Virus record (IMG/VR): IMGVR_UViG_3300042515_001753 | Span: 1 to 64,000 of that record | Direction: 5' to 3' (one strand) | Length of the DNA: 64,000 nt | Shown here: positions 2 to 36,332 of the stretch, in pieces | How positions within the stretch are numbered: the stretch's first letter is position 1 | Layout: each line of letters opens with the position of its first letter | Made by a program: the position numbers and the translations under genes | Notes under the pieces: model-generated | Told to the model about the DNA's origin: nothing | Seen by the model: the letters and a program-made list of their open reading frames with translations, nothing else | Database searches by the model: none

Positions 2-3000
2 ATTGAATATAATCTGCTTATTAATACCAGCAACAGGACCAATTAATCCTTGAAGACCTTGTGTTCCTTGAATACCTTGAAGACCCTGAAGTCCTTGTGT
101 TCCTTGAGTACCTGTACCTCCTGTTCCTCCAGCAGTACCTTGAAGACCCTGAAGTCCTTGTGTTCCTTGAGTACCTGTACCTCCTGTTCCTCCAGCAGTA
201 CCTTGAAGACCCTGAAGTCCTTGTGAACCAACTGTACCTTGTGAACCTACTGTACCCTGAAGTCCCTGAAGACCTTGAGTTCCTTGTGAACCTACTATAC
301 CCTGAAGTCCCTGAAGACCTTGAGTTCCTTGTGAACCTACTATACCCTGAAGTCCCTGAAGACCTTGTGAACCAACTGTACCTTGTGAACCTACCGTACC
401 TTGAGTCCCCTGAAGACCTTGAAGACCTTGAGTTCCTTGTGAACCAACTGTACCTTGAGTCCCCTGAAGACCCTGACGACCTTGAAGACCTTGAGTTCCT
501 TGTGCTCCTTGAGTACCCTGAAGTCCTTGAGTACCCTGAAGTCCTTGAGTACCTTGAGTACCTTGAGTACCCTGGAGTCCTTGAATACCTTGAGTACCTT
601 GAGTTCCCTGGAGTCCTTGAGTACCTTGGAGTCCTTGAGTACCTTGAGTACCTTGAGTACCTTGAGTACCCTGGAGTCCTTGTGTACCTTGAGTACCTTG
701 AGTACCTTGAGTACCCTGGAGTCCTTGTGTACCTTGAGTACCTTGAGTACCTTGAGTACCCTGGAGTCCTTGAGTACCTTGAGTACCTTGAGTACCTTGT
801 TGACCTTGAGTTCCTTGAGTACCCTGGAGACCTTGAGTACCTTGAGTACCTTGAGTACCTTGTTCTCCCTGAAGACCTTGAGTACCTTGTGTTCCCTGCT
901 GACCTTGAAGACCTTGAGTACCCTGGAGACCCTGAGTACCTTGTATTCCCTGTAGGGCTGCATCCTGAATTGTTGATTTATAAATTTGGTCAGTTGCATT
1001 ATCATAAATTAAAATCAAATCATCAGAAGTTACACTACTTGTAGATATTTGACCTTTAATCGCTTGTTTTGTAACAATACCATCAAGGTATGGAGAAGTT
1101 ACAGTAGTATCAGTAACTTGCATTCCACCAGCAGCAAGTCTTACTCCATAAGGAACTTGAGTTGAACCAATACCTACACCATAATTAAATAACCAAGCAT
1201 CAGTTCCAAGTCCAGAATAAGTTCCAGACCTAACCCACATTATTTGCTTGTAACTTTCTGGAAGTGTATTAGCAGTACCAACTTGGAATGGAACTAATGG
1301 GATTCCTTCGGTAGATGCAATAGCAATACCACCGTGATTTGCGGTCGTATCAGTCGGTAAAGATATTGTTGTTAAACCCAGGACAATTTCTTTGTCCTGA
1401 ACTCTTAGTTCTGTTGCACTAATATAAACTGATGTACCACCAATTGTTAGATTATTTTGAACATTTAAATCATAGACATTTAATTGAGTCCCATCAAAAG
1501 TTAAATTATTAGAACCAGTTGGATTATTAGAACCATCTTTATAAACAACTTGGTTTGCAGAACCTGCTACTGGACCGGTTTGACCTTGAAGACCCTGGAG
1601 TCCTTGTGTACCTTGAGTACCTTGAGTACCTTGAAGACCCTGGAGACCCTGAGCACCCTGAGCACCCTGAGTACCTTGAGTACCTTGAGTACCTTGAAGA
1701 CCCTGAAGTCCTTGAAGTCCTTGAAGACCCTGAGTACCTTGAGTTCCTTGTGAACCTACTGTACCTTGTAGACCCTGAGTGCCTTGAGTCCCCTGAAGAC
1801 CCTGAGTACCTTGAGTACCTTGAGTACCTTGAGTACCTTGAGTACCCTGCTCACCCTGTAGTCCCTGAGTACCCTGGAGTCCTTGTGTACCTTGAGTACC
1901 TTGAAGACCCTGGAGACCCTGAGCACCCTGAGCACCCTGAGTACCTTGAGTTCCTTGTGAACCTACTGTACCTTGTAGACCCTGAGTGCCTTGAGTCCCC
2001 TGAAGACCCTGAAGACCTTGAGTACCTTGAGTACCTTGAGTACCCTGCTCACCCTGTAGTCCCTGAGTACCCTGGAGTCCTTGTGTACCTTGAGTACCTT
2101 GAGTACCTTGAAGACCCTGAGCACCTTGAGTACCCTGCTCACCCTGTAGTCCCTGAGTACCCTGGAGACCTTGTGTACCTTGAGTACCTTGAGTACCCTG
2201 AGTACCCTGAGTACCTTGAGTACCTTGAAGACCCTGAGTACCCTGAGTACCTTGAGTACCTTGAAGACCCTGAAGTCCTTGAAGACCTTGAGTACCTTGA
2301 AGACCTTGAGTACCTTGGAGACCTTGAGTACCTTGAAGTCCTTGAAGACCCTGAGTACCTTGAGTACCCTGAGTACCTTGAAGACCTTGTATTCCCTGAG
2401 TACCCTGAGTACCTTGAAGACCTTGTATTCCCTGAGTACCCTGAGTACCTTGAAGACCTTGAGTTCCCTGGAGTCCTTGCTCACCCTGGAGTCCTTGAGT
2501 TCCTTGCGTACCTTGAGTACCTTGCGTACCTTGAGTACCTTGCTCACCCTGGAGTCCTTGAGTACCTTGCTCACCCTGGAGTCCTTGAGTACCTTGAGTG
2601 CCTTGATGACCTTGAAGACCCTGAGTACCTTGAGTGCCTTGATGACCTTGAGTACCTTGTTCTCCTTGAAGACCCTGAAGTCCTTGAGTACCTTGTTCTC
2701 CTTGAAGACCTTGAGTACCTTGAAGACCTTGAGTACCTTGTTCCCCTTGAAGACCCTGAGTACCTTGAGTACCCTGAGTACCTTGAAGACCTTGTATTCC
2801 CTGAGTACCCTGAGTACCTTGAAGACCCTGAAGTCCTTGAAGACCTTGAGTACCTTGAAGACCTTGAGTACCTTGTTCTCCTTGAAGACCCTGAAGTCCT
2901 TGAGTACCTTGTTCTCCTTGAAGACCTTGAGTACCTTGAAGACCTTGAGTACCTTGAAGACCTTGAGTACCTTGTTCTCCTTGAAGACCCTGAAGACCTT

Positions 3001-4720
3001 GTATTCCCTGAGTACCCTGAGTACCTTGAAGACCTTGAGTACCTTGTTCTCCTTGAAGACCCTGAAGTCCTTGAAGACCCTGAAGTCCTTGAAGACCTTG
3101 AAGACCTTGAGTACCTTGTTCCCCTTGAAGACCCTGAAGTCCTTGAAGACCTTGAGTACCTTGAAGACCTTGAGTACCTTGAAGACCTTGAGTACCTTGT
3201 TCCCCTTGAAGACCCTGAAGTCCTTGAAGACCCTGAAGACCCTGAAGTCCTTGAGTACCTTGAAGACCTTGCAACGCAGCATTTTGAATTGTTGCCTTTC
3301 CTACAACTGTCCCACTTACATCATAAAGAGCAATAAAGTCTCCACTCTGCGGATCGGCAATTAAAGGAAGACCATTAATATCAAGATTTGATGCAGTTCC
3401 ATTAAAACGAGTCGCAGTTACTTCAGTATCAGTAATCTGAACATTACCAACTGCCAAACGAACTCCATAAGGAACTTGAGTTGAACCAATACCAACACCA
3501 TAATTAAATAACCAGGCATCAGTATTCAATCCGGCAAAAGCACCGGACTTGAACCACATTATTTTCTTATATGTGGCAGGTAATGTTTCAATACCAACAA
3601 TATTGAGACTTACAAGAGGAGTTCCTTCGGTAGATGCAATTGCAATACCACCGTGATTTGCCGTTGTATCTGTGGAAACATCATTACCCTGAGAATCGGT
3701 TGTAAATCCAAGAATAATGTCCGCATCACTAACTCTAAAGTTTTCAACAAGAATATAACCTGCTGTACCACCAACAGTAATATTTCCAGTTACATTAAGA
3801 TTATTATTAACCTGTAAATCATTTCCAATCGTTACATTTCCAGGTAAAGTTGGATTTGTTGAAATTGAAACAACAGGAGTTGAACTTTCTCCCGTTCCTC
3901 CTGATACATAAATCTGATTTGCCGCCCCAGAAATTGTCTGAATATAATCTCCAAATGTATCAGTTCCTAACCCAACACTATTTGGTTGAATAGTTGCTGC
4001 TAATGATACATTACCAGTTCCATCAAAACTAATTGGAGAAGCAACAACATCTCCAGTAATTTCAAAAGTTCTTGGAGTGACTAATTGAATTGCAGATGCG
4101 GCAATGCCTGTCAAGCTGCCTACAAATCCACCAAGAGATGTAGTTATACCTGTAATATAAGCGTCTCCAGAAATAGTAATCCCAGATTCGGTTGTTTCAA
4201 GTTTTACATTATTATTATAATAAAGTTGAGCACCACCATTAGGATTAAAAATTGCGCTTGTAACTGTGGCAAAAGGATCCGCAATTTGAATGTTGTTGCC
4301 TAAAATATAAAGAGTAGATCCAGAAATATCACGAATTATTGAACTATTACCATTAGAATAAATCTCTAAATCTGGATTATCACCAAAATATAATCTATCA
4401 TTAGATCTAAAATATGCATTATTTTCAAATGTTGTAATTCCAGAAATAATTAAATCCGAATTAATACCAACTCTACCACCAAAAGTAGAAACTCCCGTTA
4501 CATTTAAATTATCTGCAGTAAGATCATCAAAAAATACATCATCGGTTACATATAAATCACCAACAATATTTGTATCACCAATAACTTTAAGAGAATATTG
4601 TTCGGCATTTGTCGTTCCAATACCTACCTTTCCCGTTACCTGAATAACAGTCTTATCTTCACTATAGGATGATAAACCTACTTTGAGTTCTCTTTGCCTA
4701 CCGCTGACGTACTTATCCAT
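2..4720 (-). CDS. Giant collagen-like tail fibre/virion protein, 3' end beyond window (>1570 aa)
   Basis: ATG at 4720 (MDKYVSGRQRELKVGLSSYSEDKTVIQVTGKVGIGTTN). Frame checked at 3280, 1576 and 949. Two long Gly-X-Gln blocks and VGIGT/GIGST fibre motifs. Absent from the ORF track, consistent with no stop inside the window. Confidence 0.85.
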   Translation of the reverse strand, partial: MDKYVSGRQRELKVGLSSYSEDKTVIQVTGKVGIGTTNAEQYSLKVIGDTNIVGDLYVTDDVFFDDLTADNLNVTGVSTFGGRVGINSDLIISGITTFENNAYFRSNDRLYFGDNPDLEIYSNGNSSIIRDISGSTLYILGNNIQIADPFATVTSAIFNPNGGAQLYYNNNVKLETTESGITISGDAYITGITTSLGGFVGSLTGIAASAIQLVTPRTFEITGDVVASPISFDGTGNVSLAATIQPNSVGLGTDTFGDYIQTISGAANQIYVSGGTGESSTPVVSISTNPTLPGNVTIGNDLQVNNNLNVTGNITVGGTAGYILVENFRVSDADIILGFTTDSQGNDVSTDTTANHGGIAIASTEGTPLVSLNIVGIETLPATYKKIMWFKSGAFAGLNTDAWLFNYGVGIGSTQVPYGVRLAVGNVQITDTEVTATRFNGTASNLDINGLPLIADPQSGDFIALYDVSGTVVGKATIQNAALQGLQGTQGLQGLQGLQGLQGLQGEQGTQGLQGTQGLQGTQGLQGLQGLQGEQGTQGLQGLQGLQGLQGLQGLQGEQGTQGLQGTQGTQGIQGLQGLQGEQGTQGLQGTQGLQGTQGLQGEQGTQGLQGLQGEQGTQGLQGTQGLQGLQGLQGTQGTQGIQGLQGTQGTQGTQGLQGEQGTQGLQGTQGLQGEQGTQGLQGLQGEQGTQGHQGTQGTQGLQGHQGTQGTQGLQGEQGTQGLQGEQGTQGTQGTQGTQGTQGLQGEQGLQGTQGLQGTQGTQGIQGLQGTQGTQGIQGLQGTQGTQGTQGLQGLQGTQGLQGTQGLQGTQGLQGLQGLQGTQGTQGTQGLQGTQGTQGTQGTQGTQGTQGLQGTQGLQGEQGTQGAQGLQGTQGTQGTQGLQGTQGLQGEQGTQGTQGTQGLQGLQGTQGTQGLQGTVGSQGTQGTQGAQGAQGLQGLQGTQGTQGLQGTQGLQGEQGTQGTQGTQGTQGTQGLQGTQGTQGLQGTVGSQGTQGTQGLQGLQGLQGLQGTQGTQGTQGAQGAQGLQGLQGTQGTQGTQGLQGLQGQTGPVAGSANQVVYKDGSNNPTGSNNLTFDGTQLNVYDLNVQNNLTIGGTSVYISATELRVQDKEIVLGLTTISLPTDTTANHGGIAIASTEGIPLVPFQVGTANTLPESYKQIMWVRSGTYSGLGTDAWLFNYGVGIGSTQVPYGVRLAAGGMQVTDTTVTSPYLDGIVTKQAIKGQISTSSVTSDDLILIYDNATDQIYKSTIQDAALQGIQGTQGLQGTQGLQGQQGTQGTQGLQGEQGTQGTQGTQGLQGTQGTQGQQGTQGTQGTQGLQGTQGTQGTQGTQGLQGTQGTQGTQGTQGLQGTQGTQGTQGTQGLQGTQGLQGTQGTQGIQGLQGTQGTQGTQGLQGTQGLQGTQGAQGTQGLQGRQGLQGTQGTVGSQGTQGLQGLQGTQGTVGSQGTVGSQGLQGLQGIVGSQGTQGLQGLQGIVGSQGTQGLQGLQGTVGSQGTVGSQGLQGLQGTAGGTGGTGTQGTQGLQGLQGTAGGTGGTGTQGTQGLQGLQGIQGTQGLQGLIGPVAGINKQIIFN
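35..949 (-). repeat. Collagen block 2, about 101 Gly-X-Y triplets
   Basis: Same 9-bp units, same frame as block 1. Confidence 0.95.
1571..3268 (-). repeat. Collagen block 1, about 188 Gly-X-Y triplets (mostly GTQ/GLQ)
   Basis: 9-bp unit (ccttgagta / ccttgaaga / ccctgagta) tandemly repeated. Confidence 0.95.
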
Positions 4721-8494: not shown

Positions 8495-9199
8495 TCAATA
8501 CTTTTCCAAACAATATATGCCGTTCTTTTCAGTAATCGCAGAGCAAGTATCCACAAAATCACCACAACACATATAAGTGATTTTACCAAAGTTACGAATA
8601 TTTCCAGAATGTATATGCCCGCAAATTACACCAGAATATTTCTTATCTCTTTGGGCACAATAAGAAGCAATATCGGTCTCATATTGATTGATATAATTCT
8701 TTCCTCTTACAGTATTCTTGAGGAAATATACTAAAGAAAATCTAAAGAATCTTTCCAACCAAATACTTAAGGGTGTAATTAATTCATAACCTTTATTGAA
8801 CATTAATTGCTTCCAAGACCCAGAAGAGTACTCAGAATACTTATCTCCGTGAATACAAAGAAACTTATTTCCCTTTGAGTCCTTATGAATATACTCTTCT
8901 ACCATCTTAAAGTTCTTGTGTTCAAAGTCAGTATAACGACGAATCATTCCCTCGTGATTACCAAGAATATAAACAATCTCGGTTCCTTTCTTTGCGAGAT
9001 TGAGTATTTGATGAACGCATTCAGTATGTTCCTTTTTCCAAAGAGTATTATATTTTTCCATACAGTAGATGTCTATAATGTCACCTACCAGAACTAACTT
9101 TTTGGTTTTGAGTTCTTTCAGAAACTTAAGAAACTTTTCGGTATTACATCTTGGAGTTCCTAAATGCACATCTGAAACAAATACCGTATCGTAAGTCAT
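8495..9199 (-). CDS. Calcineurin-like metallophosphoesterase (LpxH-like)
   Basis: SDVHLG, GDIID, GNHE, HGD, GHIH motifs. Confidence 0.85.
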   Translation of the reverse strand: MTYDTVFVSDVHLGTPRCNTEKFLKFLKELKTKKLVLVGDIIDIYCMEKYNTLWKKEHTECVHQILNLAKKGTEIVYILGNHEGMIRRYTDFEHKNFKMVEEYIHKDSKGNKFLCIHGDKYSEYSSGSWKQLMFNKGYELITPLSIWLERFFRFSLVYFLKNTVRGKNYINQYETDIASYCAQRDKKYSGVICGHIHSGNIRNFGKITYMCCGDFVDTCSAITEKNGIYCLEKY

Positions 9200-9284: not shown

Positions 9285-9905
9285 TTAGCATCTTTCTATA
9301 AATGAAATTACTTCTTGAACTGGTAAAGTATCTATAAAGTGTTCGGTCATTCCACGACCCATACTCATTTCATTTAGTGGTGCCTTATATGAAGAAAAAT
9401 GATTAAGAACTTTCCTTTCCAAGTTCCAAATATCTATGGACTTCCCAGACCATTCTCCAATCAGTTCTGCGGTTTCTTTTTTACGATATAACCAACCCTT
9501 ATAAGACCTACCGACTTTATACTTACCATTATGGAGTTTTATGAAATAGAGTTTGTCTGGATGCTCTGGGTCTTTACATACCCACCCGATTGATTGTGGA
9601 TATGGTTTTCCTTTTCTAGGACTAACTTTTCCAGTATTTGCTTTTTTGGTTGCTTCTATTGCTTTTTGAGAACAAGATTTTCCATAGTTTGGATTATTTT
9701 CTCCAGCATAACTTCTTCTTTTACTTATAACTCTTTCAGCAAAATCTGGTGCTTGTGCCGGATTTCCATAGTCATTACGAATACGAATTTTTACACCACA
9801 TTCCTTAAGAACTTTACTGACCTTATGATGAGAGATGTTAAGTTGTTTAGCAACATCTCTCATTTTCATACCAGAATTATATAAATCTATTATTTCATTT
9901 ACCAC
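9285..9905 (-). CDS. Putative free-standing homing endonuclease (HTH + NUMOD3 + GIY-YIG-like C-terminal domain)
   Basis: N-terminal HTH, GENNPNYGK, LYFIKL..YKVGRS..LERKVL..GMTEHF; late promoter 9929-9936. Confidence 0.65.
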   Translation of the reverse strand: MVNEIIDLYNSGMKMRDVAKQLNISHHKVSKVLKECGVKIRIRNDYGNPAQAPDFAERVISKRRSYAGENNPNYGKSCSQKAIEATKKANTGKVSPRKGKPYPQSIGWVCKDPEHPDKLYFIKLHNGKYKVGRSYKGWLYRKKETAELIGEWSGKSIDIWNLERKVLNHFSSYKAPLNEMSMGRGMTEHFIDTLPVQEVISFIERC

Positions 9906-9935
9906 AACTTCTATACCAAAGTTATAACTATTTAT

Positions 9936-9961
9936 AAAAAAAGGAACTTCGAAGAGTTCCC
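9936..9961 (-). terminator. Intrinsic terminator after psbA
   Basis: GGAACT-CTTCGA-AGTTCC followed by T-tract. Confidence 0.8.
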
Positions 9962-9988
9962 TTATTATACCATTATTTGGTTTTTATA

Positions 9989-11774
9989 TCAACCGATTGA
10001 CGGTGCCGTTAAAGCAACTTCTTGAGTAGAAGCGGCAGCAAGGTCAAGTGGAAAATTGTGAGCATTCCGTTCATGCCGTTTTTGTTATCGTAAGAACTCT
10101 TTATTTCTTACTTCTTACTGTCGCCAGTAAGACCAGACTATCTCTTCATCCGTTCTGGATGCTGGGCATTCGTGGGTAGATTATTGTTGGAACTCACTAC
10201 CTAGTCGTTAGACCTGCCGAAGAACCTATGTCCTCTTCGGATTGGTACGGGATTGTCTACTTGAGAGTTTCCCCGTTTAACCCAGTTTCGTCAAGGAATA
10301 TTCCTATTCCAGGGTGACTACATTTAGGAAATCACTTCCATACCAAGACCAGCACGATTAAGAATGTCAGCCCAAGTAGGAATTACTCGGTTTTGACTAT
10401 CAACGATGGACTGGTTAAAATTAAAACCGTTGCACTAGACCCATAAGTTTTCCATCCTTATGGAGTGGACTATATCTTCATCCCAGTAGGATGTCGGACG
10501 CTTAAACCTGTTATTAAGGAAACTATATTCCTCAGGTAGTCTCTGAACCTTTCTTGAGTGTACTCAAGACTTGGCTGCTGATTGCCCTTTTATTTGGAGG
10601 GTTTCCAGCAATTCATCCGATGTTTGCCGTTAAATTGCTTTAACGGAACCCCAATTGAGGTTAAAAGCCATCGTAGAAACCCCGAGAGCAGTGAACCAAA
10701 TTCCAACAACAGGCCATGTAGCAAGAAAGAAATGAAGCGACCTAGAGTTATTAAACGAAGCATATTGAAAAATAAGGCGTCCAAAATAACCATGAGCGGC
10801 AACGATATTGTATGTCTCTTCTTCTTGTCCGAACTTGTAACCATAATTCTGTGATTCAGTTTCTGTAGTTTCACGAACGAGTGACGAAGTAACCAAAGAA
10901 CCGTGCATCGCAGAGAACAGTGAACCACCGAACACACCAGCAACTCCAAGCATGTGGAATGGGTGCATAAGGATGTTATGTTCTGCCTGGAATACAAGCA
11001 TATAGTTAAAAGTACCAGAGATGCCTAGTGGCATAGCGTCAGAGAAAGAACCTTGACCGAAGGGATAGACCAAGAATACGGCACTCGCAGCAGCAACAGG
11101 TGCTGAGTAAGCGACGCAAATCCAAGGACGCATACCTAGACGGTAAGAAAGTTCCCATTCACGACCCATATAAGCATAGATGCCGATGAGGAAGTGAAAT
11201 ACAACGAGTTGGAATGGACCCCCATTATAGCAATCGGGGGACTATATGTTTCCATATAGATTGGACTATATCTTCACCTTATTTCTATTTAAGGTGTTGG
11301 GCGCTAATCTGGTATTACTCAACACGCTTGTTGACCCCAGTAGTCTCTGAACCTTCCACAGAAGTATCGTCTGTGGCTTGGCTGCTGATTGCCTTGTCGT
11401 ATAAACGATTTAGGGTTCCAGCAATTCACCCAATTTATAGTGACCCTATTTTACTTAAGCCACTCATCAAGACTTGCAGCTTCCCAGATTGGGTAGAAAT
11501 GCAGTCCGATAGCATTAGAAGAAGGAACAACGGCACCAGAGATGATGTTGTTACCATACATTAGAGAACCCGCTACTGGTTCACGAATGCCGTCAATGTC
11601 CACTGGGGGAGCACCAACGAAAGCGATAATGAAGCAAACCGTTGCCGCAAGAAGGCAAGGCACCATCAATACACCAAACCACCCGACATAAAGACGATTA
11701 TTGGTAGATGTAATCCAGTCACAGAAATCGTTCCAAGTATTTGTGGAACGTTGTTGAGCAATTGTAGCAGTCAT
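9989..11774 (-). CDS. psbA: Photosystem II D1 protein; exons 11458-11774, 10658-11230, 10331-10432, 9989-10076
   Basis: Exons total 1080 nt = 359 aa + stop; junctions restore EWL-YNGGP, FNL-NGFNF and [16 protein letters not shown] with H332/E333 at canonical numbering. Confidence 0.97.
10077..10330 (-). mobile_element. Group I intron 3 in psbA (254 nt, codon 331)
   Basis: P AAACGGGGAA, Q AATCCCGTA, R GTCTAACGACTA, S AAGAGATAGTCT; P1 GTGAT/GTCAC; terminal G. Confidence 0.93.
10433..10657 (-). mobile_element. Group I intron 2 in psbA (225 nt, codon 297)
   Basis: Same P/Q/R/S words as intron 1; P1 AACCT/GGGTT; terminal G. Confidence 0.95.
11231..11457 (-). mobile_element. Group I intron 1 in psbA (227 nt, codon 106)
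   Basis: Exon ends in U, intron ends in G; P AATTGCTGGAA, Q AATCAGCAG, R GTTCAGAGACTA, S AAGATATAGTCC; P1 AGTGGCT/GGTCACT. Confidence 0.95.
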
Positions 11775-11789
11775 TTAAATAAAAAGGGT

Positions 11790-11911
11790 AAGTATGAGTT
11801 CGGGGGAACGAACTGGTTACATTATGTTCCACGACACCCTCCATCGTGGATATGAGGGATTCTTTACTTCTCGTGATCCCGGTTGGAGAAGACACGGTTC
11901 TTAATCCGTGT
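11790..11911 (-). ncRNA. Structured psbA 5' leader (probably PhotoRC-II-like)
   Basis: Hairpins CACGG/CCGTG, CCACGAT/GTCGTGG (loop GAGGG complementary to upstream CCCTC), AGTTCG/CGAACT; family name from memory. Confidence 0.65.
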
Positions 11912-11919
11912 ATGTATAT

Positions 11920-11948
11920 ATAATAACACTGTTAGGAAATCCTGTCAA
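11920..11948 (-). promoter_or_regulatory. Sigma70-type psbA promoter
   Basis: TTGACA-17-TATTAT. Confidence 0.8.
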
Positions 11949-11993
11949 TAGGTCCAATTACCTAAGTGGCACAGCATAAATAAGAACCCTTTG

Positions 11994-12281: not shown

Positions 12282-12401
12282 TCACCATACTCCCGGAAGA
12301 ATTTGACCGGTGGTAAGATAAGTGCCTACGGCAATTACAAAACCAAGCATGGCAAGTCTTCCGTTTAAAATTTCTGCCTCGGGGGTAAATCCAAATTTCA
12401 T
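12282..12401 (-). CDS. hli: High-light inducible protein (39 aa)
   Basis: MKFGFTPEAEILNGRLAMLGF..TGQILPGVW; below the ORF-track cutoff. Confidence 0.95.
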   Translation of the reverse strand: MKFGFTPEAEILNGRLAMLGFVIAVGTYLTTGQILPGVW

Positions 12402-12498: not shown

Positions 12499-12708
12499 TC
12501 AGATTACACCAAAGAAGAGGTTCCCTGTGAGTGCATAAGAAACAACTGCGGCAACAAATCCTAGCATTGCCCATCTTGAATTTGCCTTTTCTGCTCTTTC
12601 CGCATAAGTCTCAAGTGCATAACGCTCTGCATCAGTTGGAGACACATACATTTCAGGTTCCTTTGCGAACAGGTTTTGTTGCCCGTGCTCATTAGTCGTA
12701 ACGGTCAT
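12499..12708 (-). CDS. hli: High-light inducible protein (69 aa)
   Basis: AEKANSRWAMLGF motif; promoter TTGACA-17-TATAAT at 12733-12761. Confidence 0.92.
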   Translation of the reverse strand: MTVTTNEHGQQNLFAKEPEMYVSPTDAERYALETYAERAEKANSRWAMLGFVAAVVSYALTGNLFFGVI

Positions 12709-12781: not shown

Positions 12782-13573
12782 CTAACTTTGTGGCGGGGAT
12801 GGGTTTGTAATCCTACCAAGATATGGATCATAATTCATCAAGTCATCAATTTTCATATCATAACCCTGGCGTTCCCAAAAATGAAGAAGACCATCGTGAC
12901 TTTGACGATGAAAAACATCAATATGTTCTGGATGAATGGAAGAACCTAAAGCAATCTTATAAAGGAACAAAGGAATTGAAAAAGTATTACCAGAATTGTA
13001 AATCAAGTCATCAGCAACTGCTCTGGGCTTTACACCATTATCAAGTTTGTACTTATCTCCACGAACATGATGTCTTAGAATCTTTTCTGCATGATGTCGA
13101 GTAATCATATAAGCGGCAGTTGAAAAATCATTCACAAATCTCTTATGAAGTTTAACATGTAAATCACCGGTACAAATAATGGCAAGTTGAATTACATCAT
13201 AATCATAAGGAACTTTAGCAACAAAATCACTCCAAGTAAAGTTCCAGAATCTGACAAGTTGTAAATCTACATCATCTTCCATAATCACCGCATAGGGACT
13301 GTCAGAGGTCTCTATCCAGTGCTTGAGTGCCTTGAGATGAGAAGTTGTACATCCAATCTCACCAGAGGTCATATTGTCAGGATAGCGACCCTTAATGATG
13401 TCGCTCAGGTCATCTTCTCTTCCATCATAGGCAGAGATACGAGTATAGTTTTCTATCTCCCAGTACTTAAACTGCTCCTCCATATATTCCTTTCTTTCTG
13501 GTTGCCCATCAAGATTAAGATAATAAATAGGTCCAATATTCTTAAGTTTATATGCCGCTTTATTTTTGTCCAT
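12782..13573 (-). CDS. Glycosyltransferase family 25
   Basis: YYLNLD..ERK, GEIGCTTSHLKA, IMEDDV. Confidence 0.88.
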   Translation of the reverse strand: MDKNKAAYKLKNIGPIYYLNLDGQPERKEYMEEQFKYWEIENYTRISAYDGREDDLSDIIKGRYPDNMTSGEIGCTTSHLKALKHWIETSDSPYAVIMEDDVDLQLVRFWNFTWSDFVAKVPYDYDVIQLAIICTGDLHVKLHKRFVNDFSTAAYMITRHHAEKILRHHVRGDKYKLDNGVKPRAVADDLIYNSGNTFSIPLFLYKIALGSSIHPEHIDVFHRQSHDGLLHFWERQGYDMKIDDLMNYDPYLGRITNPSPPQS

Positions 13574-30239: not shown

Positions 30240-30293
30240 TTGTATAGCATGTAATAACCCTTTAATCAAGGGGGAGTTGCGCTTCTCCAGGTT

Positions 30294-30388
30294 GCTCGCC
30301 ACCAATTCTTTGACTGGAAATTGGAAACCAGACGGGAGTAACCTCCATCCGCACCAGTCGTCATTTATATCGCCCATACGACAAGGGC
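30294..30388 (-). ncRNA. wcaG-like RNA motif
   Basis: Two pseudoknot-like units each ending in UGGUG, upstream of gmd/fcl; family name from memory. Confidence 0.65.
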
Positions 30389-30412
30389 ATTAAGGGGTCA
30401 TATTTGACTCCA

Positions 30413-30487
30413 CCAGTACTTTTAGAGTCTCTCCGTGACTAAAGGGGGTTCATCACCGACCAGTACTTTTAGAGACTCTCCGTGTCT
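30413..30487 (-). repeat. Two 28-nt direct repeats (30413-30440, 30460-30487)
   Basis: 26/28 identical; the two differences are compensatory in a stem. Confidence 0.9.
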
Positions 30488-30726
30488 TCATCATCGTCTC
30501 TTATATAACAAGGTACTCTATCAGGGTCCAACCATTTAGCATAATTAAAGTCTTCCATAGCAGTCAAGCACTGCATCTGATTATCAAACAGATAGATATC
30601 ATTCCATCGTTTGGTATAATAATCTTTTTTCTGAAGGCGATAATCGGGTTTGTTGTTAAGTTCAATAATACCCTTTTCTACAAACCGATATTCTTCTCGT
30701 TCCAAGAGAACTTTAGATTGAATCAT
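30469..30726 (-). CDS. Hypothetical protein
   Basis: 85-aa ORF, ATGA overlap with the upstream gene. Confidence 0.7.
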   Translation of the reverse strand: MIQSKVLLEREEYRFVEKGIIELNNKPDYRLQKKDYYTKRWNDIYLFDNQMQCLTAMEDFNYAKWLDPDRVPCYIRDDDEDTESL

Positions 30727-30938
30727 TTTACTTCAACAGTTTCAAGGTCCTGAATAAGATAATCAATTAGAATGTCATAGTTATCCAAAGCATCCTCAGA
30801 GAACATTACACCTTCATTTTGATAATATCGACGAATTTTTTTGTAAAGTTTTGGACTCTTTACATCAAGATAAAAATCACCATTCGCGGCGGCACGAAGA
30901 GTACTAAGTTCTTTCTTGAATTTGATAGTCAGAGACAT
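30723..30938 (-). CDS. Hypothetical protein
   Basis: 71 aa; promoter TTGACA-17-TATAAT at 30962-30990. Confidence 0.7.
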   Translation of the reverse strand: MSLTIKFKKELSTLRAAANGDFYLDVKSPKLYKKIRRYYQNEGVMFSEDALDNYDILIDYLIQDLETVEVK

Positions 30939-31014
30939 CGCTTTGATTTGTTTACCTTGTTATTATAGAGTGATTTGAGTTTTATGTCAAGTGTACCAGT
31001 CTCGGAACTGGCAA

Positions 31015-31088
31015 TCGGGCATAGAGGATTTGAACCTCTGACCTTTCCGGCCCAAGCGGAACGCGCTACCAAACTGCGCTAATGCCCG
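31015..31088 (-). tRNA. tRNA-Pro(TGG)
   Basis: Cloverleaf; anticodon loop CTTGGGC. Confidence 0.93.
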
Positions 31089-31132
31089 TATTTCTTTATG
31101 TATAATACCATGACTACCCCATCATGTCAATA

Positions 31133-31215
31133 CGGAAAGAACAGGAATCGAACCTGCGAAGTTTTTACACCCAGCCGCTTTCAAGGCGGTGTCCTCGACC
31201 AACCGGACTCTTTCC
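31133..31215 (-). tRNA. tRNA-Ser(TGA)
   Basis: Cloverleaf with long variable arm; loop CTTGAAA. Confidence 0.9.
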
Positions 31216-31226
31216 AAAATAAGTCC

Positions 31227-31487
31227 TTAACGGACTTCAAAATCAAGTCGTCTTACTTTACGCTGACGCCTTGCTTCTTGAAAGGCAAGGTCTTCATTCG
31301 TAAGAACAGTAGACTTTTCTTTGATACTCATATAGTTTACCATAACGACCTTTGATAAGTCAAGTGCCGCAATATTTTCATTATTACGAATGGTTGCCAT
31401 ATTAGGACATCCACAAGTAATTGTTTTACCAGACTTCCCTTCAATCTCGCTTCCGCAAGGCTTACATCTAACTTTTAAGTTTTCCAT
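31227..31487 (-). CDS. Hypothetical Zn-ribbon protein
   Basis: CxxC..CGC. Confidence 0.7.
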   Translation of the reverse strand: MENLKVRCKPCGSEIEGKSGKTITCGCPNMATIRNNENIAALDLSKVVMVNYMSIKEKSTVLTNEDLAFQEARRQRKVRRLDFEVR

Positions 31488-31499
31488 CGCTATAATTAA

Positions 31500-31943
31500 T
31501 TATTCAGTAAATGATCTTAACATCCAAACTGCTTTTCCGTGAGATTCATTCAAATCGTCAACAAGATTAATAGTTCCTTTTGAGTTTTGTTTCTCTGCTT
31601 CATCGGACACCTCGGTAAGCATCTCAATAATTTTCTTATGGTCTCCCATCAATTGCTCAACCATAGTCTTGGCATCAATAGACTGTGTGCTATTTGACGC
31701 CTGCTCCACTCCAGAGACCTCTGTAATGCGTGTGAGGGTGCTTACAGGTTTCATACCCAGGAATCGCATATGCTCGGTGATACGGTCGATTTCCTCAAAC
31801 ATTTCCTCATATTGCCCACCAAACAAATCGTGATACTCCTTAAAATTGGGTCCAACAACATTCCAGTGATATATCCAAGTTTTATGAAATAAGACGAAAA
31901 GTGATGCCTGTGTATCACTCAATAGTTTGAATAGTTTTTCCAT
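31500..31943 (-). CDS. dps: Dps/ferritin-like DNA-protection protein
   Basis: HWNVVGPNFKEYHDLF..EIDRITE; late promoter 31963-31970. Confidence 0.92.
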   Translation of the reverse strand: MEKLFKLLSDTQASLFVLFHKTWIYHWNVVGPNFKEYHDLFGGQYEEMFEEIDRITEHMRFLGMKPVSTLTRITEVSGVEQASNSTQSIDAKTMVEQLMGDHKKIIEMLTEVSDEAEKQNSKGTINLVDDLNESHGKAVWMLRSFTE

Positions 31944-31971
31944 TACTCAAAGTAGTTTTGAGTATTTATAA

Positions 31972-32044
31972 TGAGCAATCGCAGATTCGAACTGCGGACT
32001 TTCTGAATGTAAATCAGACACTCTAACCGCTGAGTTAATCGCCC
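31972..32044 (-). tRNA. tRNA-Val(TAC)
   Basis: Cloverleaf; loop TTTACAT. Confidence 0.93.
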
Positions 32045-32050
32045 CTAAAG

Positions 32051-32215
32051 TCAAGACTGATTCATCATATATTCTACCGTAGTTGCTATATCATTCATAG
32101 CATCACGGAGATTTTCTCTTTGACCAGATTCTTGTTTACGAATTGGACGAGAACTATCACACAGAGTCCACCTCCACTGATTCATTTCTGAGCAGAACCA
32201 TAGATTTATCTTCAT
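32051..32215 (-). CDS. Small hypothetical protein (54 aa)
   Basis: MKINLWFCSEMNQWRWTL..ESGQRENLRDAMND; read manually. Confidence 0.7.
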   Translation of the reverse strand: MKINLWFCSEMNQWRWTLCDSSRPIRKQESGQRENLRDAMNDIATTVEYMMNQS

Positions 32216-32399
32216 TCTTATAGTGTTCTAACTTAATCCAATTTATAAGAGCATTTACTTCCATCATTTTTTGTTCATCTTGTTTAATGACGATATCAGA
32301 AGGAAGTTCTCCAAAGTTAATGATTAATGGAATTGCAGTTTTATAGTATTCTAATGCTTCTATAGCAAGTTTTCTATCACGTTGAGAAATAAGCGACAT
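32157..32399 (-). CDS. Hypothetical protein
   Basis: MSLISQRDR after an AGGAGG RBS; promoter at 32421-32449. Confidence 0.65.
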   Translation of the reverse strand: MSLISQRDRKLAIEALEYYKTAIPLIINFGELPSDIVIKQDEQKMMEVNALINWIKLEHYKNEDKSMVLLRNESVEVDSV

Positions 32400-32464
32400 A
32401 GACCTCCTAACTCGTTTCTTATTATACGACAAAAGGGAGGTTTCGTCAACCCCCCATATCTATA

Positions 32465-33427
32465 TCAGTTACCGATACGCTTTACGGCAATTCTTGATTT
32501 GTTGAGAATGCTACCGGCAAGAGGAACATAACCCAGATCATCAGCAAGCATTTGTGCCTTAGAACTCAAAGCATAATTGAGTGCCTGTTGAATATCACCA
32601 GTCTTTGCACCATTTCCAGTCTTATAGGCAAGAATCCAAGTCAGAGTGGAGATAGGATATGCACCAGAGGCAGAAGGATTAGGATTTTCGCCAGCAAGAT
32701 TTGCATCCAGTTTGATAGAGTTTAGAGCAATAGCACCAGACTTAGCAGTAGGAAGAACAAACTGCCCTGCCTTATTTTGAACTGCTGCTGTCTGAAGTTT
32801 ATTTGCTTTCACAAATCCGGTATTCACATAACCAATAGAACCAGGAGTGGTCTTAACAGTACCAGAAACACCTTCATTTCCTTTACCACCAATACCAACA
32901 GGCCATTTTACTGACTTACCAACTCCAGGTTTCCAACCACCAAAAGCATCCAGAGAATTAGTAAATGCAAAAGTAGTTCCAGAACCATCAGAACGATGAA
33001 CCACAAGAATAGGTCCAGCAGCACATCCAAGTGCCTTCCAGTTCTTGATGGTTCCAGAAAACACATCTACAGTTTGCTTCTGAGTGAGTTTCAGAGTGCA
33101 TCCAGGTTTGTTATAAGCAACGGCAATAGTTCCACCCACCATAGGAATTTGAACCACGCCACGCTTAACTTTACTTGCCTCTTTTGACGAAATAGGTTCA
33201 TCAGTTGCACCAAAATCGACAGTTCCTGCGACATACTGACGGACACCAGAACCAGAACCAACTGACTGATAATTCACACGATTGCCAGTTTCAGAAGCAT
33301 AACCTTGGAACCAGCGTTGATAGATGGGTGCTGGAAAGGTGGCACCAGCACCATTCAAAGGAGGTCCAGCAAGAGCGGCAACAGGAGCAGCAACCAGACC
33401 AGCAACAATAAGATTTTTGAGTTTCAT
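32465..33427 (-). CDS. pstS: Phosphate ABC transporter substrate-binding protein
   Basis: Signal peptide, GAGATFPAP, YQSVGSGSG, HRSDGSGTT. Confidence 0.97.
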   Translation of the reverse strand: MKLKNLIVAGLVAAPVAALAGPPLNGAGATFPAPIYQRWFQGYASETGNRVNYQSVGSGSGVRQYVAGTVDFGATDEPISSKEASKVKRGVVQIPMVGGTIAVAYNKPGCTLKLTQKQTVDVFSGTIKNWKALGCAAGPILVVHRSDGSGTTFAFTNSLDAFGGWKPGVGKSVKWPVGIGGKGNEGVSGTVKTTPGSIGYVNTGFVKANKLQTAAVQNKAGQFVLPTAKSGAIALNSIKLDANLAGENPNPSASGAYPISTLTWILAYKTGNGAKTGDIQQALNYALSSKAQMLADDLGYVPLAGSILNKSRIAVKRIGN

Positions 33428-33450
33428 AAAAAGTGAATAACTACAGAGTA

Positions 33451-33495
33451 ATTATAAGGTAAAGGAAAGATAAAATCAACTAAGATTTGGTTAAG
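33451..33495 (-). promoter_or_regulatory. Putative pho box and -10 for pstS
   Basis: CTTAACCA-N3-CTTAGTTG plus two degenerate TTTA units at ~11-bp period, then TATAAT. Confidence 0.6.
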
Positions 33496-33497
33496 AC

Positions 33498-33527
33498 AAA
33501 AAAAAGCACCCAAAGAATGGGTGCTTC
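33498..33527 (-). terminator. Terminator after porin
   Basis: AAGCACCCA-TTCTT-TGGGTGCTT + T-tract. Confidence 0.85.
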
Positions 33528-33549
33528 TACTCATATTATGAGTTGTTTA

Positions 33550-35034
33550 TCAGAATGTGAACTTAGTCTGGACTACACCACCCCACTTGCTGGAATCTTG
33601 ATAACGCTGATTGTTATCAACATAGAACAGAGCAGGAGTAATGCTGATGTTATCGGTGACTTGGAACTTGTAGAAGATTTCAAGCAGAGTTGCATCATCT
33701 ACACCAGCGGTTTCGGCAGAAGGTGCTTGACCCAAAGCAATACCAGCAGAGTTACCCTTAGCAAAGACATCGCTCCACTGAAGACCAACCATCCAAGAAT
33801 TGGAATCAGTAGCATCACCCGAACCAGGAGTACCACTTACACCATTATATCCATAAGCAGCAGAAACGGAAGGAACCCAACCAGATTGTTGTGGTTGCCA
33901 ATAAGCATTAAGAGCAACACTATTGGATTCTTGACCAGCAGCAAGAGTACCATTAGCACTCAAGAGACCGTTGTAGGTGCGCGAACGAGTGCCTTCAGTA
34001 CCATAACGGTAACCTACGGCAACACCCCACTGAGGAGCACGATAACCAACTTGAGCAAGCAGGTTCAGAGCACCATCAGCATTGAATACACCAGTTTCGG
34101 AATCATCACCGTTCTGAGCAACATAGTTCAGACCAGCAACAAATCCACCTTGACCTTTCTTGGTAGGTTGTTTCCACTGAGCACCAAAACCAGCACCAGT
34201 TGCCTTGTTATAGACACCGGGAACACCAGAAACAGCAAAGAAGTCAAGAATTTCTGACTTATAAGCAGAAGGAATCCATGCCATCTCGGTATTACGAACC
34301 AGAGGACCAGCAGTTAGAGTTAGACTCTTACTTACAGGGAACTGGTAGTAAAGACGATCGATCTCTACAGTTCTATCGGTAGATTCTGCCTTATCAAGTT
34401 TGAACAAAGAAGAACTAGAACCAAAAGGATCGCTACTGAAGTTACCGGAACGAAGACGAGTACGGAGCAAGTCCTTACCAGTAAACGAGGTATCAAAGTT
34501 CAGACGCAGATCATAGTTGAATGCGGTGTTACCCACATCAGCACCTTTATTGGTTTCAAGACTAGGAACTCCACCAAGCATGAAATTGACTTCACCCTTG
34601 AGTTTAGTAGTGGTAGAGAATTGTGTTGCTTCCAAGTTTCCAACACGGTTCTCCAGACCATCTACACGACCCTTGAGTACTGCAAGTTCACTCTTGAATT
34701 CGTTCAGCAGTCGTTGAAGTTCATCTGTAGTTTCAGTCACACGATCCAAACAGGCATTCAGCAGTGCTGCTGCTTCAAAGCGAGTCATTGCCTGACCACC
34801 TTTGTATGTGCCGTTAGGATAACCAGCAACGCAACCATAACGGTCTACGAGGTTGGTAAGTGCCTGATATGCCCAATCAGTAGGTTGGACATCAGAGAAT
34901 TGAGTAACACTTGTAACCTGTGCTGCCGAAGCATACTTATTGACATCCTCAGTATTGAGTTCTGCAGCGATAGCAGCAGGAGCAACAAGACCCAGAGCAA
35001 CAGGGACGAGCATTAGTTTTTTAAGAAAATTCAT
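33550..35034 (-). CDS. Cyanobacterial outer-membrane porin (Som/OprB-type with SLH domain)
   Basis: FSDVQPTDWAYQAL..YGCVAGYP, TRFEAAALL, QFSTTTKLKGE, terminal Phe. Confidence 0.95.
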   Translation of the reverse strand: MNFLKKLMLVPVALGLVAPAAIAAELNTEDVNKYASAAQVTSVTQFSDVQPTDWAYQALTNLVDRYGCVAGYPNGTYKGGQAMTRFEAAALLNACLDRVTETTDELQRLLNEFKSELAVLKGRVDGLENRVGNLEATQFSTTTKLKGEVNFMLGGVPSLETNKGADVGNTAFNYDLRLNFDTSFTGKDLLRTRLRSGNFSSDPFGSSSSLFKLDKAESTDRTVEIDRLYYQFPVSKSLTLTAGPLVRNTEMAWIPSAYKSEILDFFAVSGVPGVYNKATGAGFGAQWKQPTKKGQGGFVAGLNYVAQNGDDSETGVFNADGALNLLAQVGYRAPQWGVAVGYRYGTEGTRSRTYNGLLSANGTLAAGQESNSVALNAYWQPQQSGWVPSVSAAYGYNGVSGTPGSGDATDSNSWMVGLQWSDVFAKGNSAGIALGQAPSAETAGVDDATLLEIFYKFQVTDNISITPALFYVDNNQRYQDSSKWGGVVQTKFTF

Positions 35035-35093
35035 ATAGTTCGTTAAGAATTACAACTACGAAGTTTATTTAGACCCCCTGATATTTTAGGGGA

Positions 35094-35164
35094 AGCGGAT
35101 ACACGGATTTGAACCGAGGATAAAAGTTTGGAAAACTCTTGTGTTACCACTACACCATATCCGC
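35094..35164 (-). tRNA. tRNA-Gly(TCC)
   Basis: Cloverleaf; loop TTTCCAA. Confidence 0.92.
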
Positions 35165-35166
35165 AA

Positions 35167-35240
35167 TGTTGAGAGTGGAAGGTTTCGCATCCTTCTACTG
35201 TATCCCTTGTCGGGGTGCCTTACTTTTGGCATCACTCTCA
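35167..35240 (-). ncRNA. tRNA-sized cloverleaf RNA without a canonical anticodon arm
   Basis: TGAGAGTG/CACTCTCA, TGCC/GGCA, CCC/GGG, GAAGG/CCTTC. Confidence 0.6.
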
Positions 35241-35291
35241 GCGTACTTCCTTCACACCATGGAATTATAAGACATAATGAGTATTATGTCA

Positions 35292-35362
35292 AGCCCCATA
35301 ACAGAATTGAACTGTTCTCTGCAGTTTACAAAACTGCTGCATCACCACAATGCTTATAGGGC
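35292..35362 (-). tRNA. tRNA-Thr(TGT)
   Basis: Cloverleaf; loop TTTGTAA. Confidence 0.9.
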
Positions 35363-35670: not shown

Positions 35671-35706
35671 TATTATTGGTATAACTTTTATTATTTATAC
35701 CGATAA

Positions 35707-35779
35707 CTCCCCCACCTGGACTCGAACCAGGAACACTTTGATTAACAGTCAAATACTCTGCCAATTGAGCTATAGGGGA
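35707..35779 (-). tRNA. tRNA-Asn(GTT)
   Basis: Cloverleaf; loop CTGTTAA. Confidence 0.95.
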
Positions 35780-35783
35780 ATAT

Positions 35784-35898: not shown

Positions 35899-35934
35899 GT
35901 TTATATAGTAACAAACTTTTGAAGGTTTGTCAAG

Positions 35935-36008: not shown

Positions 36009-36012
36009 AAGG

Positions 36013-36084: not shown

Positions 36085-36106
36085 AAAATTTGGATATAAA
36101 ATCCAA

Positions 36107-36254: not shown

Positions 36255-36255
36255 T

Positions 36256-36330: not shown

Positions 36331-36332
36331 AG

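What the first reader, a model, noticed from the sequence alone, without database searches (positions are those of the whole stretch)
9989..11774. psbA interrupted by three group I introns
Seen: introns of 227, 225 and 254 nt, each with U at the 5' splice site, terminal G, P/Q/R/S and a matching internal guide. All fall after the second base of a codon (106, 297, 331), and splicing restores a 359-aa D1. Introns 1 and 2 share identical core words but have different guides, which suggests retargeting of one lineage. Intron 3 is distinct and sits next to Mn ligands H332/E333. The cultured cyanophages I recall carry at most one psbA intron. Inference: three splicing steps could gate D1 output.
Basis: partly seen in the sequence, partly recalled or inferred. 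Interest (0 to 1): 0.8.

Follow-up and report, generated by a model that had tools for sequence, protein, structure and literature searches.

The report
Three self-splicing introns in phage psbA
The photosystem gene psbA of an uncultured lake cyanophage is split by three small self-splicing group I introns that must be removed to make D1 protein; this is real, but it is one example of a pattern that is common in uncultured phage contigs and is present, unrecognised, in one cultured phage.

Summary
On the minus strand, psbA (11774-9989) carries three ORF-less group I introns of 227, 225 and 254 nt. All three exceed Rfam's threshold. Each has U before the 5' splice site, a terminal G, and P1/P10 guides matched to its own exons. 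Removing them gives an intact 359-aa D1. One lake metatranscriptome contig joins 10076 to 10331, exactly excising intron 3.

The novelty claim does not hold. The cultured freshwater phage S-SRM01 also has three psbA introns, at other sites; its authors recognised only one. In IMG/VR contigs I catalogued 16 intron sites in viral psbA, with genes carrying 2 to 4 or more introns. At least three further contigs carry the window's 106/297/331 trio.

Introns 1 and 2 are not recent copies of each other (60% identity).
- Intron 1 is the ORF-less form of an HNH-ORF intron at the same site.
- Intron 2 is a mosaic: site-297 ends around an S-PM2-type core.
- Intron 3 belongs to a separate, phage-restricted lineage that co-occurs with the ORF just downstream of psbA, a likely free-standing homing endonuclease.

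Best reading: selfish mobile introns. Light-gated splicing is possible but untested.

The parts
11920..11948 (-). sigma-70-like promoter match (TTGACA, 17 nt, TATTAT) upstream of psbA
   Evidence: Consensus scan, 11 of 12 positions matched. A match only, not evidence of function.
11814..11904 (-). PhotoRC-II RNA motif in the psbA 5' leader
   Evidence: Rfam RF01717, 48.7 bits against a gathering score of 39. The same motif precedes psbA in S-SRM01.
11458..11774 (-). psbA exon 1 (codons 1 to the second base of 106)
   Evidence: Translation and splice reconstruction; tblastn to relatives.
11231..11457 (-). Group I intron 1 (227 nt, ORF-less, site L106 phase 2)
   Evidence: RF00028 at 108 bits. 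P1 is AGTGGCT/GGTCACT and P10 is CTAT/ATAG. It is 92% identical to the 3' 162 nt of an 814-nt ORF-bearing intron at the same site in L165/L118.
10658..11230 (-). psbA exon 2 (573 nt)
   Evidence: 99-100% protein identity to many viral contigs.
10433..10657 (-). Group I intron 2 (225 nt, ORF-less, site L297 phase 2), a mosaic
   Evidence: RF00028 at 98.4 bits. P1 is AACCT/GGGTT and P10 is CAA/TTG. Its core is 81-84% identical to S-PM2-type site-334 introns, while its ends are 74-86% identical to site-297 introns.
10331..10432 (-). psbA exon 3 (102 nt)
10077..10330 (-). Group I intron 3 (254 nt, ORF-less, site M331 phase 2), a separate lineage
   Evidence: RF00028 at 57.8 bits. P1 is GTGAT/GTCAC and P10 is GCAT/ATGT. 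21 of 58 predicted pairs show compensatory changes across 36 distinct relatives. An RNA contig joins 10076 to 10331.
9989..10076 (-). psbA exon 4 with the stop codon
9940..9963 (-). Intrinsic-terminator-like hairpin plus T run directly after psbA
   Evidence: A similar hairpin follows psbA in S-SRM01 and S-PM2.
9285..9905 (-). Free-standing 206-aa ORF: N-terminal HTH and NUMOD3, plus a strongly conserved C-terminal domain. Candidate homing endonuclease partnered with intron 3.
   Evidence: Pfam finds NUMOD3 (E 2e-5) and a weak HTH. The family has 69 metagenomic members with an almost invariant C-domain. The ESM Atlas gives GIY-YIG/T5orf172 as a lead. It co-occurs with site-331 and site-336 introns and is nearly absent beside intronless psbA. 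The nuclease fold is not confirmed.

Best explanation
This is the psbA gene of an uncultured freshwater T4-like cyanophage. It lies on a 234-kb IMG/VR contig, and the nearest cultured relative is S-SRM01, which is distant. [quoted passage not shown] The psbA leader carries a PhotoRC-II motif. Each intron pairs its internal guide with its own 5' exon (P1, with a U.G wobble at the splice site) and 3' exon (P10). Each is then excised by the standard two-step guanosine-initiated reaction, and the ligated exons encode a normal 359-aa D1. The introns are best read as selfish mobile elements kept harmless by efficient splicing, at different stages of the homing cycle. Intron 1 matches an HNH-endonuclease-bearing intron at the same site but lacks its ORF. 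Intron 2 is a recombinant whose catalytic core came from the S-PM2-type intron of site 334. Intron 3 is probably mobilised in trans by the free-standing endonuclease-like gene just downstream of psbA, as in the F-CphI 'collaborative homing' model. Shown here: the intron anatomy, the restored reading frame, covariation for the intron 3 family, the relationships to other introns, the ORF co-occurrence, and one exact spliced junction in RNA. Inferred: self-splicing activity, the direction of ORF loss, and endonuclease function and target.
For: Rfam hits above threshold for all three introns. Exact restoration of D1. P1/P10 guides rarely reached by shuffles. 21 of 58 pairs are compensatory in the intron 3 family, with almost no broken pairs. 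An RNA contig in run X17 skips exactly 10077-10330, and an RNA contig of intron 1 with no differences ends exactly at 11231. Presence/absence polymorphism: near-identical D1 genes carry no intron, only intron 3 (L153, L172, L203, L209), or the full trio (L122, L234, L251, L263). ORF-bearing and ORF-less forms occur at the same sites, and an ORF-bearing variant of intron 1 appears in RNA runs (loose ends at 11393). Intron 2 is a mosaic. The window-type ORF is present beside 12 of 15 site-331 introns and 27 of 40 site-336 introns, but beside only 3 of 74 intronless psbA genes. F-CphI-type genes accompany 6 of 7 site-334 introns. The published model for S-PM2 is in PMC6083498.
Against: No biochemical proof of self-splicing. 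The RNA data are assembled contigs rather than reads. Only intron 3 has an exact junction, from one contig with 30 nt on its shorter side, and an intronless relative present as DNA or RNA could produce the same junction. Unspliced junction-crossing contigs are present for all three introns. The nuclease fold of the downstream ORF was not confirmed by Pfam, PDB sequence search or Foldseek. The co-occurrence sets were chosen by intron patterns, and some loci end soon after psbA.
Confidence: 0.82

Rival explanations
1. The introns are a regulatory device. Three serial, light- or redox-dependent splicing steps gate how much translatable psbA mRNA, and hence D1, the phage makes. It is compatible with a selfish origin.
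For: Light-dependent change of the spliced:unspliced ratio was measured for the single S-PM2d psbA intron, and the authors cite light-regulated splicing of the four Chlamydomonas psbA introns (PMC5931967). Both unspliced and spliced forms appear in lake metatranscriptome contigs. The trio is stable across several samples.
Against: Near-identical D1 genes exist with 0, 1 or 3 introns, and most close relatives have none: 63 of 68 complete genes. The introns are therefore dispensable. Intron sets differ freely between contigs (16 sites), as expected for mobile parasites rather than a fixed circuit. There are no condition-dependent data for this phage.
Confidence: 0.15
2. One or more of the introns has decayed and no longer splices, so this psbA is a pseudogene or is only rarely expressed.
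For: Intron 3 scores only 57.8 bits, close to Rfam's threshold of 50. Unspliced contigs are seen in RNA runs.
Against: The intron 3 family shows strict compensatory covariation and invariant core segments. An exact spliced junction for intron 3 exists in RNA. The exons show no frameshifts or stops and are 99-100% identical in protein to intronless relatives. Guides match the exons for all three introns.
Confidence: 0.03
3. The three-intron arrangement is a chimera produced by metagenome assembly across strains that each carry fewer introns.
For: Strains with only intron 3 co-exist in databases. RNA and DNA contig graphs branch at the intron borders.
Against: The identical trio occurs in IMG/VR contigs from at least four different datasets: L122/L207, L234, L251 and L263. 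Six DNA runs hold 0.98-0.99 of the sampled words of the whole 1786-nt stretch. Exon 3 is only 102 nt, so single reads or read pairs link introns 2 and 3.
Confidence: 0.02

Closest known systems
psbA group I intron of Synechococcus phage S-PM2 (and S-RSM88) with the free-standing endonuclease F-CphI ('collaborative homing')
   Same: An ORF-less group I intron of about 210-250 nt in a cyanomyovirus psbA, with an endonuclease-like gene immediately downstream of psbA. The core of intron 2 is 82.5% identical to the S-PM2 intron. The gene is preceded by a structured leader and followed by a terminator hairpin.
   Different: S-PM2 has one intron, between R334 and N335. The window has three, at L106, L297 and M331, and none at 334. 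The downstream gene is not an Endo VII-type F-CphI but an HTH/NUMOD3 protein with a different conserved C-domain.
psbA of freshwater Synechococcus phage S-SRM01 (MW015081)
   Same: The closest cultured relative of the window's phage. Its D1 is 337/359 identical. By my reconstruction its psbA also holds three group I introns, and joining the exons gives an intact 359-aa D1. Intron 1 is about 72% identical to S-SRM01 introns A and B.
   Different: The sites are H92|F93 (910 nt, with an HNH ORF), A250|A251 and R334|N335, so none is shared with the window. The downstream endonuclease is F-CphI-like. The published description recognises only one intron and calls the pieces partial psbA genes (PMC8557907).
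Chlamydomonas reinhardtii chloroplast psbA with four group I introns
   Same: Several group I introns in one psbA gene, with light-regulated splicing reported (as cited in PMC5931967).
   Different: A chloroplast gene with large introns. I did not compare sequences or insertion sites here.
Multi-intron genes of other phages (Twort orf142 with three introns; Bastillevirinae DNA polymerase and terminase genes with two or three)
   Same: Three self-splicing group I introns in a single phage protein-coding gene, of the phage-typical kind traditionally assigned to subgroup IA2 (PMC11878797).
   Different: Those are genes of DNA metabolism or structure in Firmicutes phages. Here the host gene is a photosynthesis auxiliary gene. 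Exon skipping is documented there; it was not seen here.

Membership tests
Group I catalytic intron (Rfam RF00028) | Conserved catalytic core (P3-P9) matching the family covariance model above the curated threshold | tested here: met
   108, 98.4 and 57.8 bits against a gathering score of 50; full-length model matches on the minus strand.
Group I catalytic intron (Rfam RF00028) | The 5' exon ends in U, which forms a U.G wobble in P1 with an internal guide near the intron's 5' end; P10 pairs with the 3' exon | tested here: met
   P1 of 7, 5 and 5 bp and P10 of 4, 3 and 4 bp. Shuffles reached this in 3, 3 and 27 of 5000 trials.
Group I catalytic intron (Rfam RF00028) | Terminal G at the 3' end of the intron, and excision that restores the host reading frame | tested here: met
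   All three introns end in G. The joined exons give a 359-aa D1.
Group I catalytic intron (Rfam RF00028) | Helices supported by compensatory base changes among relatives | tested here: met
   For the intron 3 family, 21 of 58 pairs change on both sides and are kept, with almost none broken. Not run separately for introns 1 and 2.
Group I catalytic intron (Rfam RF00028) | Self-splicing with a guanosine cofactor; spliced product present in RNA | tested here: inconclusive
   One metatranscriptome contig joins 10076 to 10331 exactly (intron 3). There are no junction contigs at 95% or better for introns 1 and 2. The data are contigs only, and an intronless relative cannot be excluded. The biochemistry is not testable here.
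S-PM2-type cyanophage psbA intron | Insertion between R334 and N335 of psbA | tested here: not met
   The window's sites are 106, 297 and 331, each in phase 2. The S-PM2 site was read.
S-PM2-type cyanophage psbA intron | Sequence kinship with the S-PM2 intron | tested here: met
   Intron 2 core: 82.5% over 160 nt. Intron 1: 69%. Intron 3: no match. Membership therefore holds for the core of intron 2 only.
Collaborative homing pair (ORF-less intron plus free-standing homing endonuclease) | An endonuclease gene adjacent to the intron-bearing gene that co-occurs with the intron | tested here: met
   ORF 9285-9905 starts 83 nt after the psbA stop. It co-occurs with site-331 and site-336 introns (12/15 and 27/40) against 3/74 intronless genes.
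Collaborative homing pair (ORF-less intron plus free-standing homing endonuclease) | A recognisable nuclease domain | tested here: inconclusive
   Pfam finds only NUMOD3 and HTH. The Atlas gives GIY-YIG/T5orf172 as a lead at score 0.90. Foldseek's best hit is not significant, at E 0.33.
Collaborative homing pair (ORF-less intron plus free-standing homing endonuclease) | The enzyme cuts the intronless allele near the insertion site, and the intron protects its own genome | not testable with these tools
   Needs an expressed protein and cleavage mapping.
Subgroup IA2 (phage-type) group I introns | An extra P7.1/P7.2 element between P7 and P3' | not tested
   The Rfam alignments show 31-35-nt insertions after the conserved GACUA in all three introns, which is consistent with this feature. 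No subgroup-specific model was run.

The most novel reading that the evidence does not exclude
psbA of freshwater cyanomyoviruses is a hot spot where a radiating population of group I introns moves among at least 16 sites. The introns would move by guide-matched reverse splicing (sites 106 and 250 share GTGGCT and the same guide) and by swapping catalytic cores between introns. A previously undescribed family of free-standing endonucleases would aid this. In multi-intron alleles such as this one, serial light-dependent splicing would set D1 output. Because exons 2 and 3 are multiples of three in length, exon skipping would stay in frame.
Probability: 0.15. Interest if true: 0.7.

Novelty: new member of a known kind. 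Interest (0 to 1): 0.4.

Why it matters
psbA is the best-known auxiliary metabolic gene of cyanophages and is widely used as a marker gene. PCR and read-mapping surveys, and automatic annotation, will miss or fragment intron-rich alleles; the S-SRM01 genome shows this, with its gene annotated as 'partial' pieces. Introns at many sites, both with and without endonuclease ORFs, make this gene a natural system for studying how group I introns change targets and exchange modules. Splicing of the S-PM2 psbA intron responds to light. Multi-intron alleles are therefore a direct way to ask whether such introns are only parasites or also regulators. The window itself adds three new insertion sites relative to published phage psbA introns, and a candidate new endonuclease partner. 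It does not reveal a new mechanism.

Tried and rejected
1. Megablast of the whole locus against 50,697 phage records found only exon matches, so the phage is not among cultured or deposited genomes.
2. A first collection scan with two conserved core words was too general. It was useful only because 15 of the loci happened to hold psbA.
4. I tried to name the nuclease domain of ORF 9285-9905 by several routes. Pfam on the whole protein and on the C-domain, PHROGs, a PDB profile search, two AlphaFold models and two Foldseek searches all gave no significant nuclease match. Only the Atlas lead and my reading of the motifs point to GIY-YIG/T5orf172.
5. The 2010 ISME J paper on the S-PM2 antisense RNA is not held, so I could not check what it says about metagenomic psbA introns.
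6. The second joint in the RNA data (11169 to 11475) does not fit intron 1. I read it as a diverged intronless relative, not as splicing.
7. I considered recent duplication of one intron within this gene as the origin of introns 1 and 2, and rejected it at 60% identity.
8. I considered a cellular origin. The core of intron 3 is absent from 185,579 species-representative genomes, apart from two tiny and probably mis-binned MAG contigs.

Full report
OBSERVATION. The region 9989-11774 encodes psbA on the minus strand. They join to 1080 nt and translate to a 359-aa D1 with no stop. The introns are 227, 225 and 254 nt. Each follows a T and ends in G, and each lies after the second base of a codon: L106, L297 and M331. 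H332 and E333 follow intron 3 directly. Their role as Mn ligands is established knowledge of photosystem II, not something tested here. A scan of the whole window with Rfam finds exactly three group I intron matches, all here and all on the minus strand. They score 108, 98.4 and 57.8 bits against a gathering score of 50.

For each intron I searched for a P1 helix that pairs the last exon bases with a guide in the first 45 intron bases. The terminal U had to lie opposite a G, and an adjacent P10 helix to the 3' exon was also required. The results were 7+4, 5+3 and 5+4 base pairs. Shuffles reached these values in 3, 3 and 27 of 5000 trials.

CONTEXT. The locus has a promoter-like match and a PhotoRC-II leader motif upstream, and a terminator-like hairpin directly after the stop codon. 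Two hli genes, a glycosyltransferase and a metallophosphoesterase lie nearby. No deposited phage genome contains the locus; only the exons match, at about 80%. The closest cultured genome over 24 kb of flanking sequence is the freshwater Synechococcus phage S-SRM01, and only 15% aligns, at 77%. Lake-water DNA runs hold 0.98-0.99 of the sampled words. A 233,886-bp IMG/VR contig carries the identical gene (L122). The source is therefore an uncultured freshwater T4-like cyanophage.

RNA EVIDENCE. I laid Logan contigs of four metatranscriptomes on 9850-11950.
- Run X17 contains a contig that joins 10076 to 10331, skipping exactly the 254 nt of intron 3. The shorter side of the joint is 30 nt and the depth is 302.
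- The same run has a 215-nt contig of intron 1 with no differences that ends exactly at 11231, the predicted 3' end of the intron.
- Contigs crossing unspliced borders exist for all three introns.
- Loose ends at 10655 show exon 2-exon 3 junctions of diverged relatives.

Because these are contigs, and because an intronless relative could give the same joint, I count this as partial support only.

KINSHIP OF THE THREE INTRONS. Introns 1 and 2 share the core words of a family that also includes the S-PM2 intron and the three S-SRM01 introns. They are only 60% identical to each other. Intron 3 is 44-55% identical to all of them.

Intron 1 matches, at 92% over its 3' 162 nt, an 814-nt intron at the same site in contigs L165 and L118. 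That intron carries a 232-aa ORF with an HNH-like motif. The homologous S-SRM01 ORF scores as HNH in Pfam. RNA contigs with an ORF-bearing version branch off at 11393. Intron 1 is thus the ORF-less form of an endonuclease-bearing intron.

Intron 2 is a mosaic. Positions 37-196 are 81-84% identical to S-PM2-type introns that sit at R334|N335, but only 66-67% identical to other site-297 introns. Its first 36 and last 29 nt are 74-86% identical to a site-297 intron and 23-40% to the site-334 introns. In contig L088, two introns at different sites share an identical peripheral segment. Exchange of modules between psbA introns therefore seems common.

Intron 3 has 92.5% relatives at the same site in contigs whose psbA has no other intron (L153, L172). 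Its core also occurs at 78-86% identity at A336|H337, with a different first 47 nt. An alignment of 36 distinct members of this lineage gives 58 predicted pairs. Of these, 21 change on both sides while staying paired, and almost none are broken. This core is absent from cultured cyanophages. In 185,579 species-representative genomes it appears only on two tiny MAG contigs.

Intron 1 and the S-SRM01 site-250 intron use the same guide (GGTCAC), and both target exons end in GTGGCT. This is the signature expected if an intron moved by reverse splicing to a site matching its guide. It is suggestive, not proven. The chance that some pair among 16 sites shares a hexamer is about 0.1 by my estimate.

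HOW COMMON IS THIS? S-SRM01 is annotated with two 'partial' D1 genes around an endonuclease ORF, and its authors inferred one intron (PMC8557907). Rfam finds two further introns there. The junctions can be read directly. Joining four exons gives an intact 359-aa D1 that is 337/359 identical to the window's. A cultured cyanophage with three psbA introns therefore already sits in GenBank.

In IMG/VR I fetched three sets of loci and mapped exon breaks with tblastn plus a junction search.
- Breaks with U before and G at the end, and 13 or more of 15 flanking residues conserved, define 15 sites: 60, 77, 92, 106, 167, 183, 186, 190, 215, 250, 297, 331, 334, 336 and 341.
- Site 337 was read by eye, which brings the total to 16.
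- Every site has its own matched P1/P10.
- Many sites occur in both a short form and a 700-900-nt form.
- Among the 68 complete genes chosen only by similarity of D1 residues 107-296, 63 have no intron, 4 have one, and one (the window's contig) has three.
- Among 36 complete genes that carry the intron 3-type core, 22 have one intron, 4 have two, 6 have three and 4 have four.
- A partial gene, L218, has at least four breaks.
- The window's exact trio recurs in L234, L251 and L263.
- Some genes have two introns 16-19 nt apart.

However, I found no paper describing multi-intron cyanophage psbA.

THE DOWNSTREAM ORF. ORF 9285-9905 starts 83 nt after psbA. Pfam sees a NUMOD3 motif and a weak HTH. 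It belongs to a family of 69 metagenomic proteins with variable N-terminal DNA-binding modules and a nearly invariant C-terminal domain of about 95 aa. The ESM Atlas places that domain nearest to GIY-YIG/T5orf172 clusters, and the motifs look compatible to me. No statistical match was obtained from Pfam, PDB sequences or Foldseek.

Close homologues (74-100% identity) lie beside psbA in 12 of 15 loci with a site-331 intron. Distant homologues (31-35% identity) lie beside 27 of 40 with a site-336 intron. Only 3 of 74 intronless genes have one. Endo VII-type F-CphI homologues accompany 6 of 7 site-334 introns. This mirrors the published F-CphI/S-PM2 'collaborative homing' arrangement (PMC6083498).

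MECHANISM AND RIVALS. I conclude that the three elements are functional self-splicing introns that behave as mobile parasites. The points in favour are:
- They are dispensable among near-identical D1 genes.
- Their sets vary between contigs.
- They occur with and without endonuclease ORFs.
- They are linked to endonuclease genes.

Regulation by light-dependent splicing has a precedent in S-PM2d (PMC5931967) and cannot be excluded. Nothing here tests it. Pseudogenisation and assembly chimerism are unlikely for the reasons given under the rival explanations.

COMPARISON AND VERDICT. The closest known systems are:
- the S-PM2 intron with F-CphI;
- the unrecognised three-intron psbA of S-SRM01;
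- Chlamydomonas psbA;
- three-intron phage genes such as Twort orf142 (PMC11878797).

The window adds new insertion sites, an intron lineage absent from cultured cyanophages, and a different candidate endonuclease. The kind of element and its way of working are known. I rate it a new member of a known kind, of moderate interest. The population-level picture is the part most worth following up: many sites, module exchange, guide-matched site switching, and a candidate new endonuclease family.

Noticed in passing
L002 (S-SRM01, MW015081) 1332-3740: The deposited annotation splits psbA into two 'partial' D1 genes. By my reading there are three introns (1608-2517 with an HNH ORF, 2992-3200, 3453-3659) and an intact 359-aa D1 after joining.
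   Followed up: yes
L267 11810-12321; L224 981-1472; L219 2857-3347: Twin introns: two group I introns separated by mini-exons of only 16-19 nt (sites 331+336 or 331+337) in viral psbA genes.
   Followed up: partly
window 11393 (RNA runs X15, X17): RNA contigs match intron 1 downstream of 11393 but continue upstream into sequence like the 3' end of the HNH ORF of S-SRM01 intron A. An ORF-bearing variant of intron 1 is therefore present in the environment.
   Followed up: partly
L088 12114-12339 and 12458-12668: Two introns at different psbA sites (297 and 336) in one contig share an identical segment of about 40 nt after the conserved GACTA. This suggests gene conversion or module exchange between introns.
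   Followed up: partly
window 10658-11230 and 10331-10432: All three introns are in phase 2, and exons 2 and 3 are 573 and 102 nt, both multiples of three. Exon skipping, as known in phage Twort, would stay in frame. No skipping joint was seen in the RNA contigs.
   Followed up: partly
window 30288-37853: A large tRNA array of about 23 Rfam tRNA hits between 31.0 and 37.8 kb on the minus strand, plus a wcaG RNA motif (30288-30390) and an abiF RNA match (37817-37853).
   Followed up: no
window 12282-12401 and 12499-12708 (minus): Two small high-light-inducible (Chloroa_b-bind) genes lie just upstream of psbA. A family-25 glycosyltransferase lies at 12782-13573.
   Followed up: no
window 8495-9199 (minus): A calcineurin-like metallophosphoesterase lies downstream of the endonuclease-like ORF. 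In S-SRM01, a gene downstream of psbA and its homing endonuclease gene is annotated UDP-2,3-diacylglucosamine diphosphatase; I did not test whether the two are homologous.
   Followed up: no
L284 and L285 (genome contigs): The only 'cellular' hits to the intron 3 core are contigs of 1.3-1.7 kb binned into a Flavobacteriaceae MAG and an Acidibacter MAG. These are probably mis-binned phage fragments.
   Followed up: no
L165 2370-3187: This contig has two tandem Endo VII-type (F-CphI-like) ORFs downstream of a psbA that carries introns at sites 106 and 334.
   Followed up: partly
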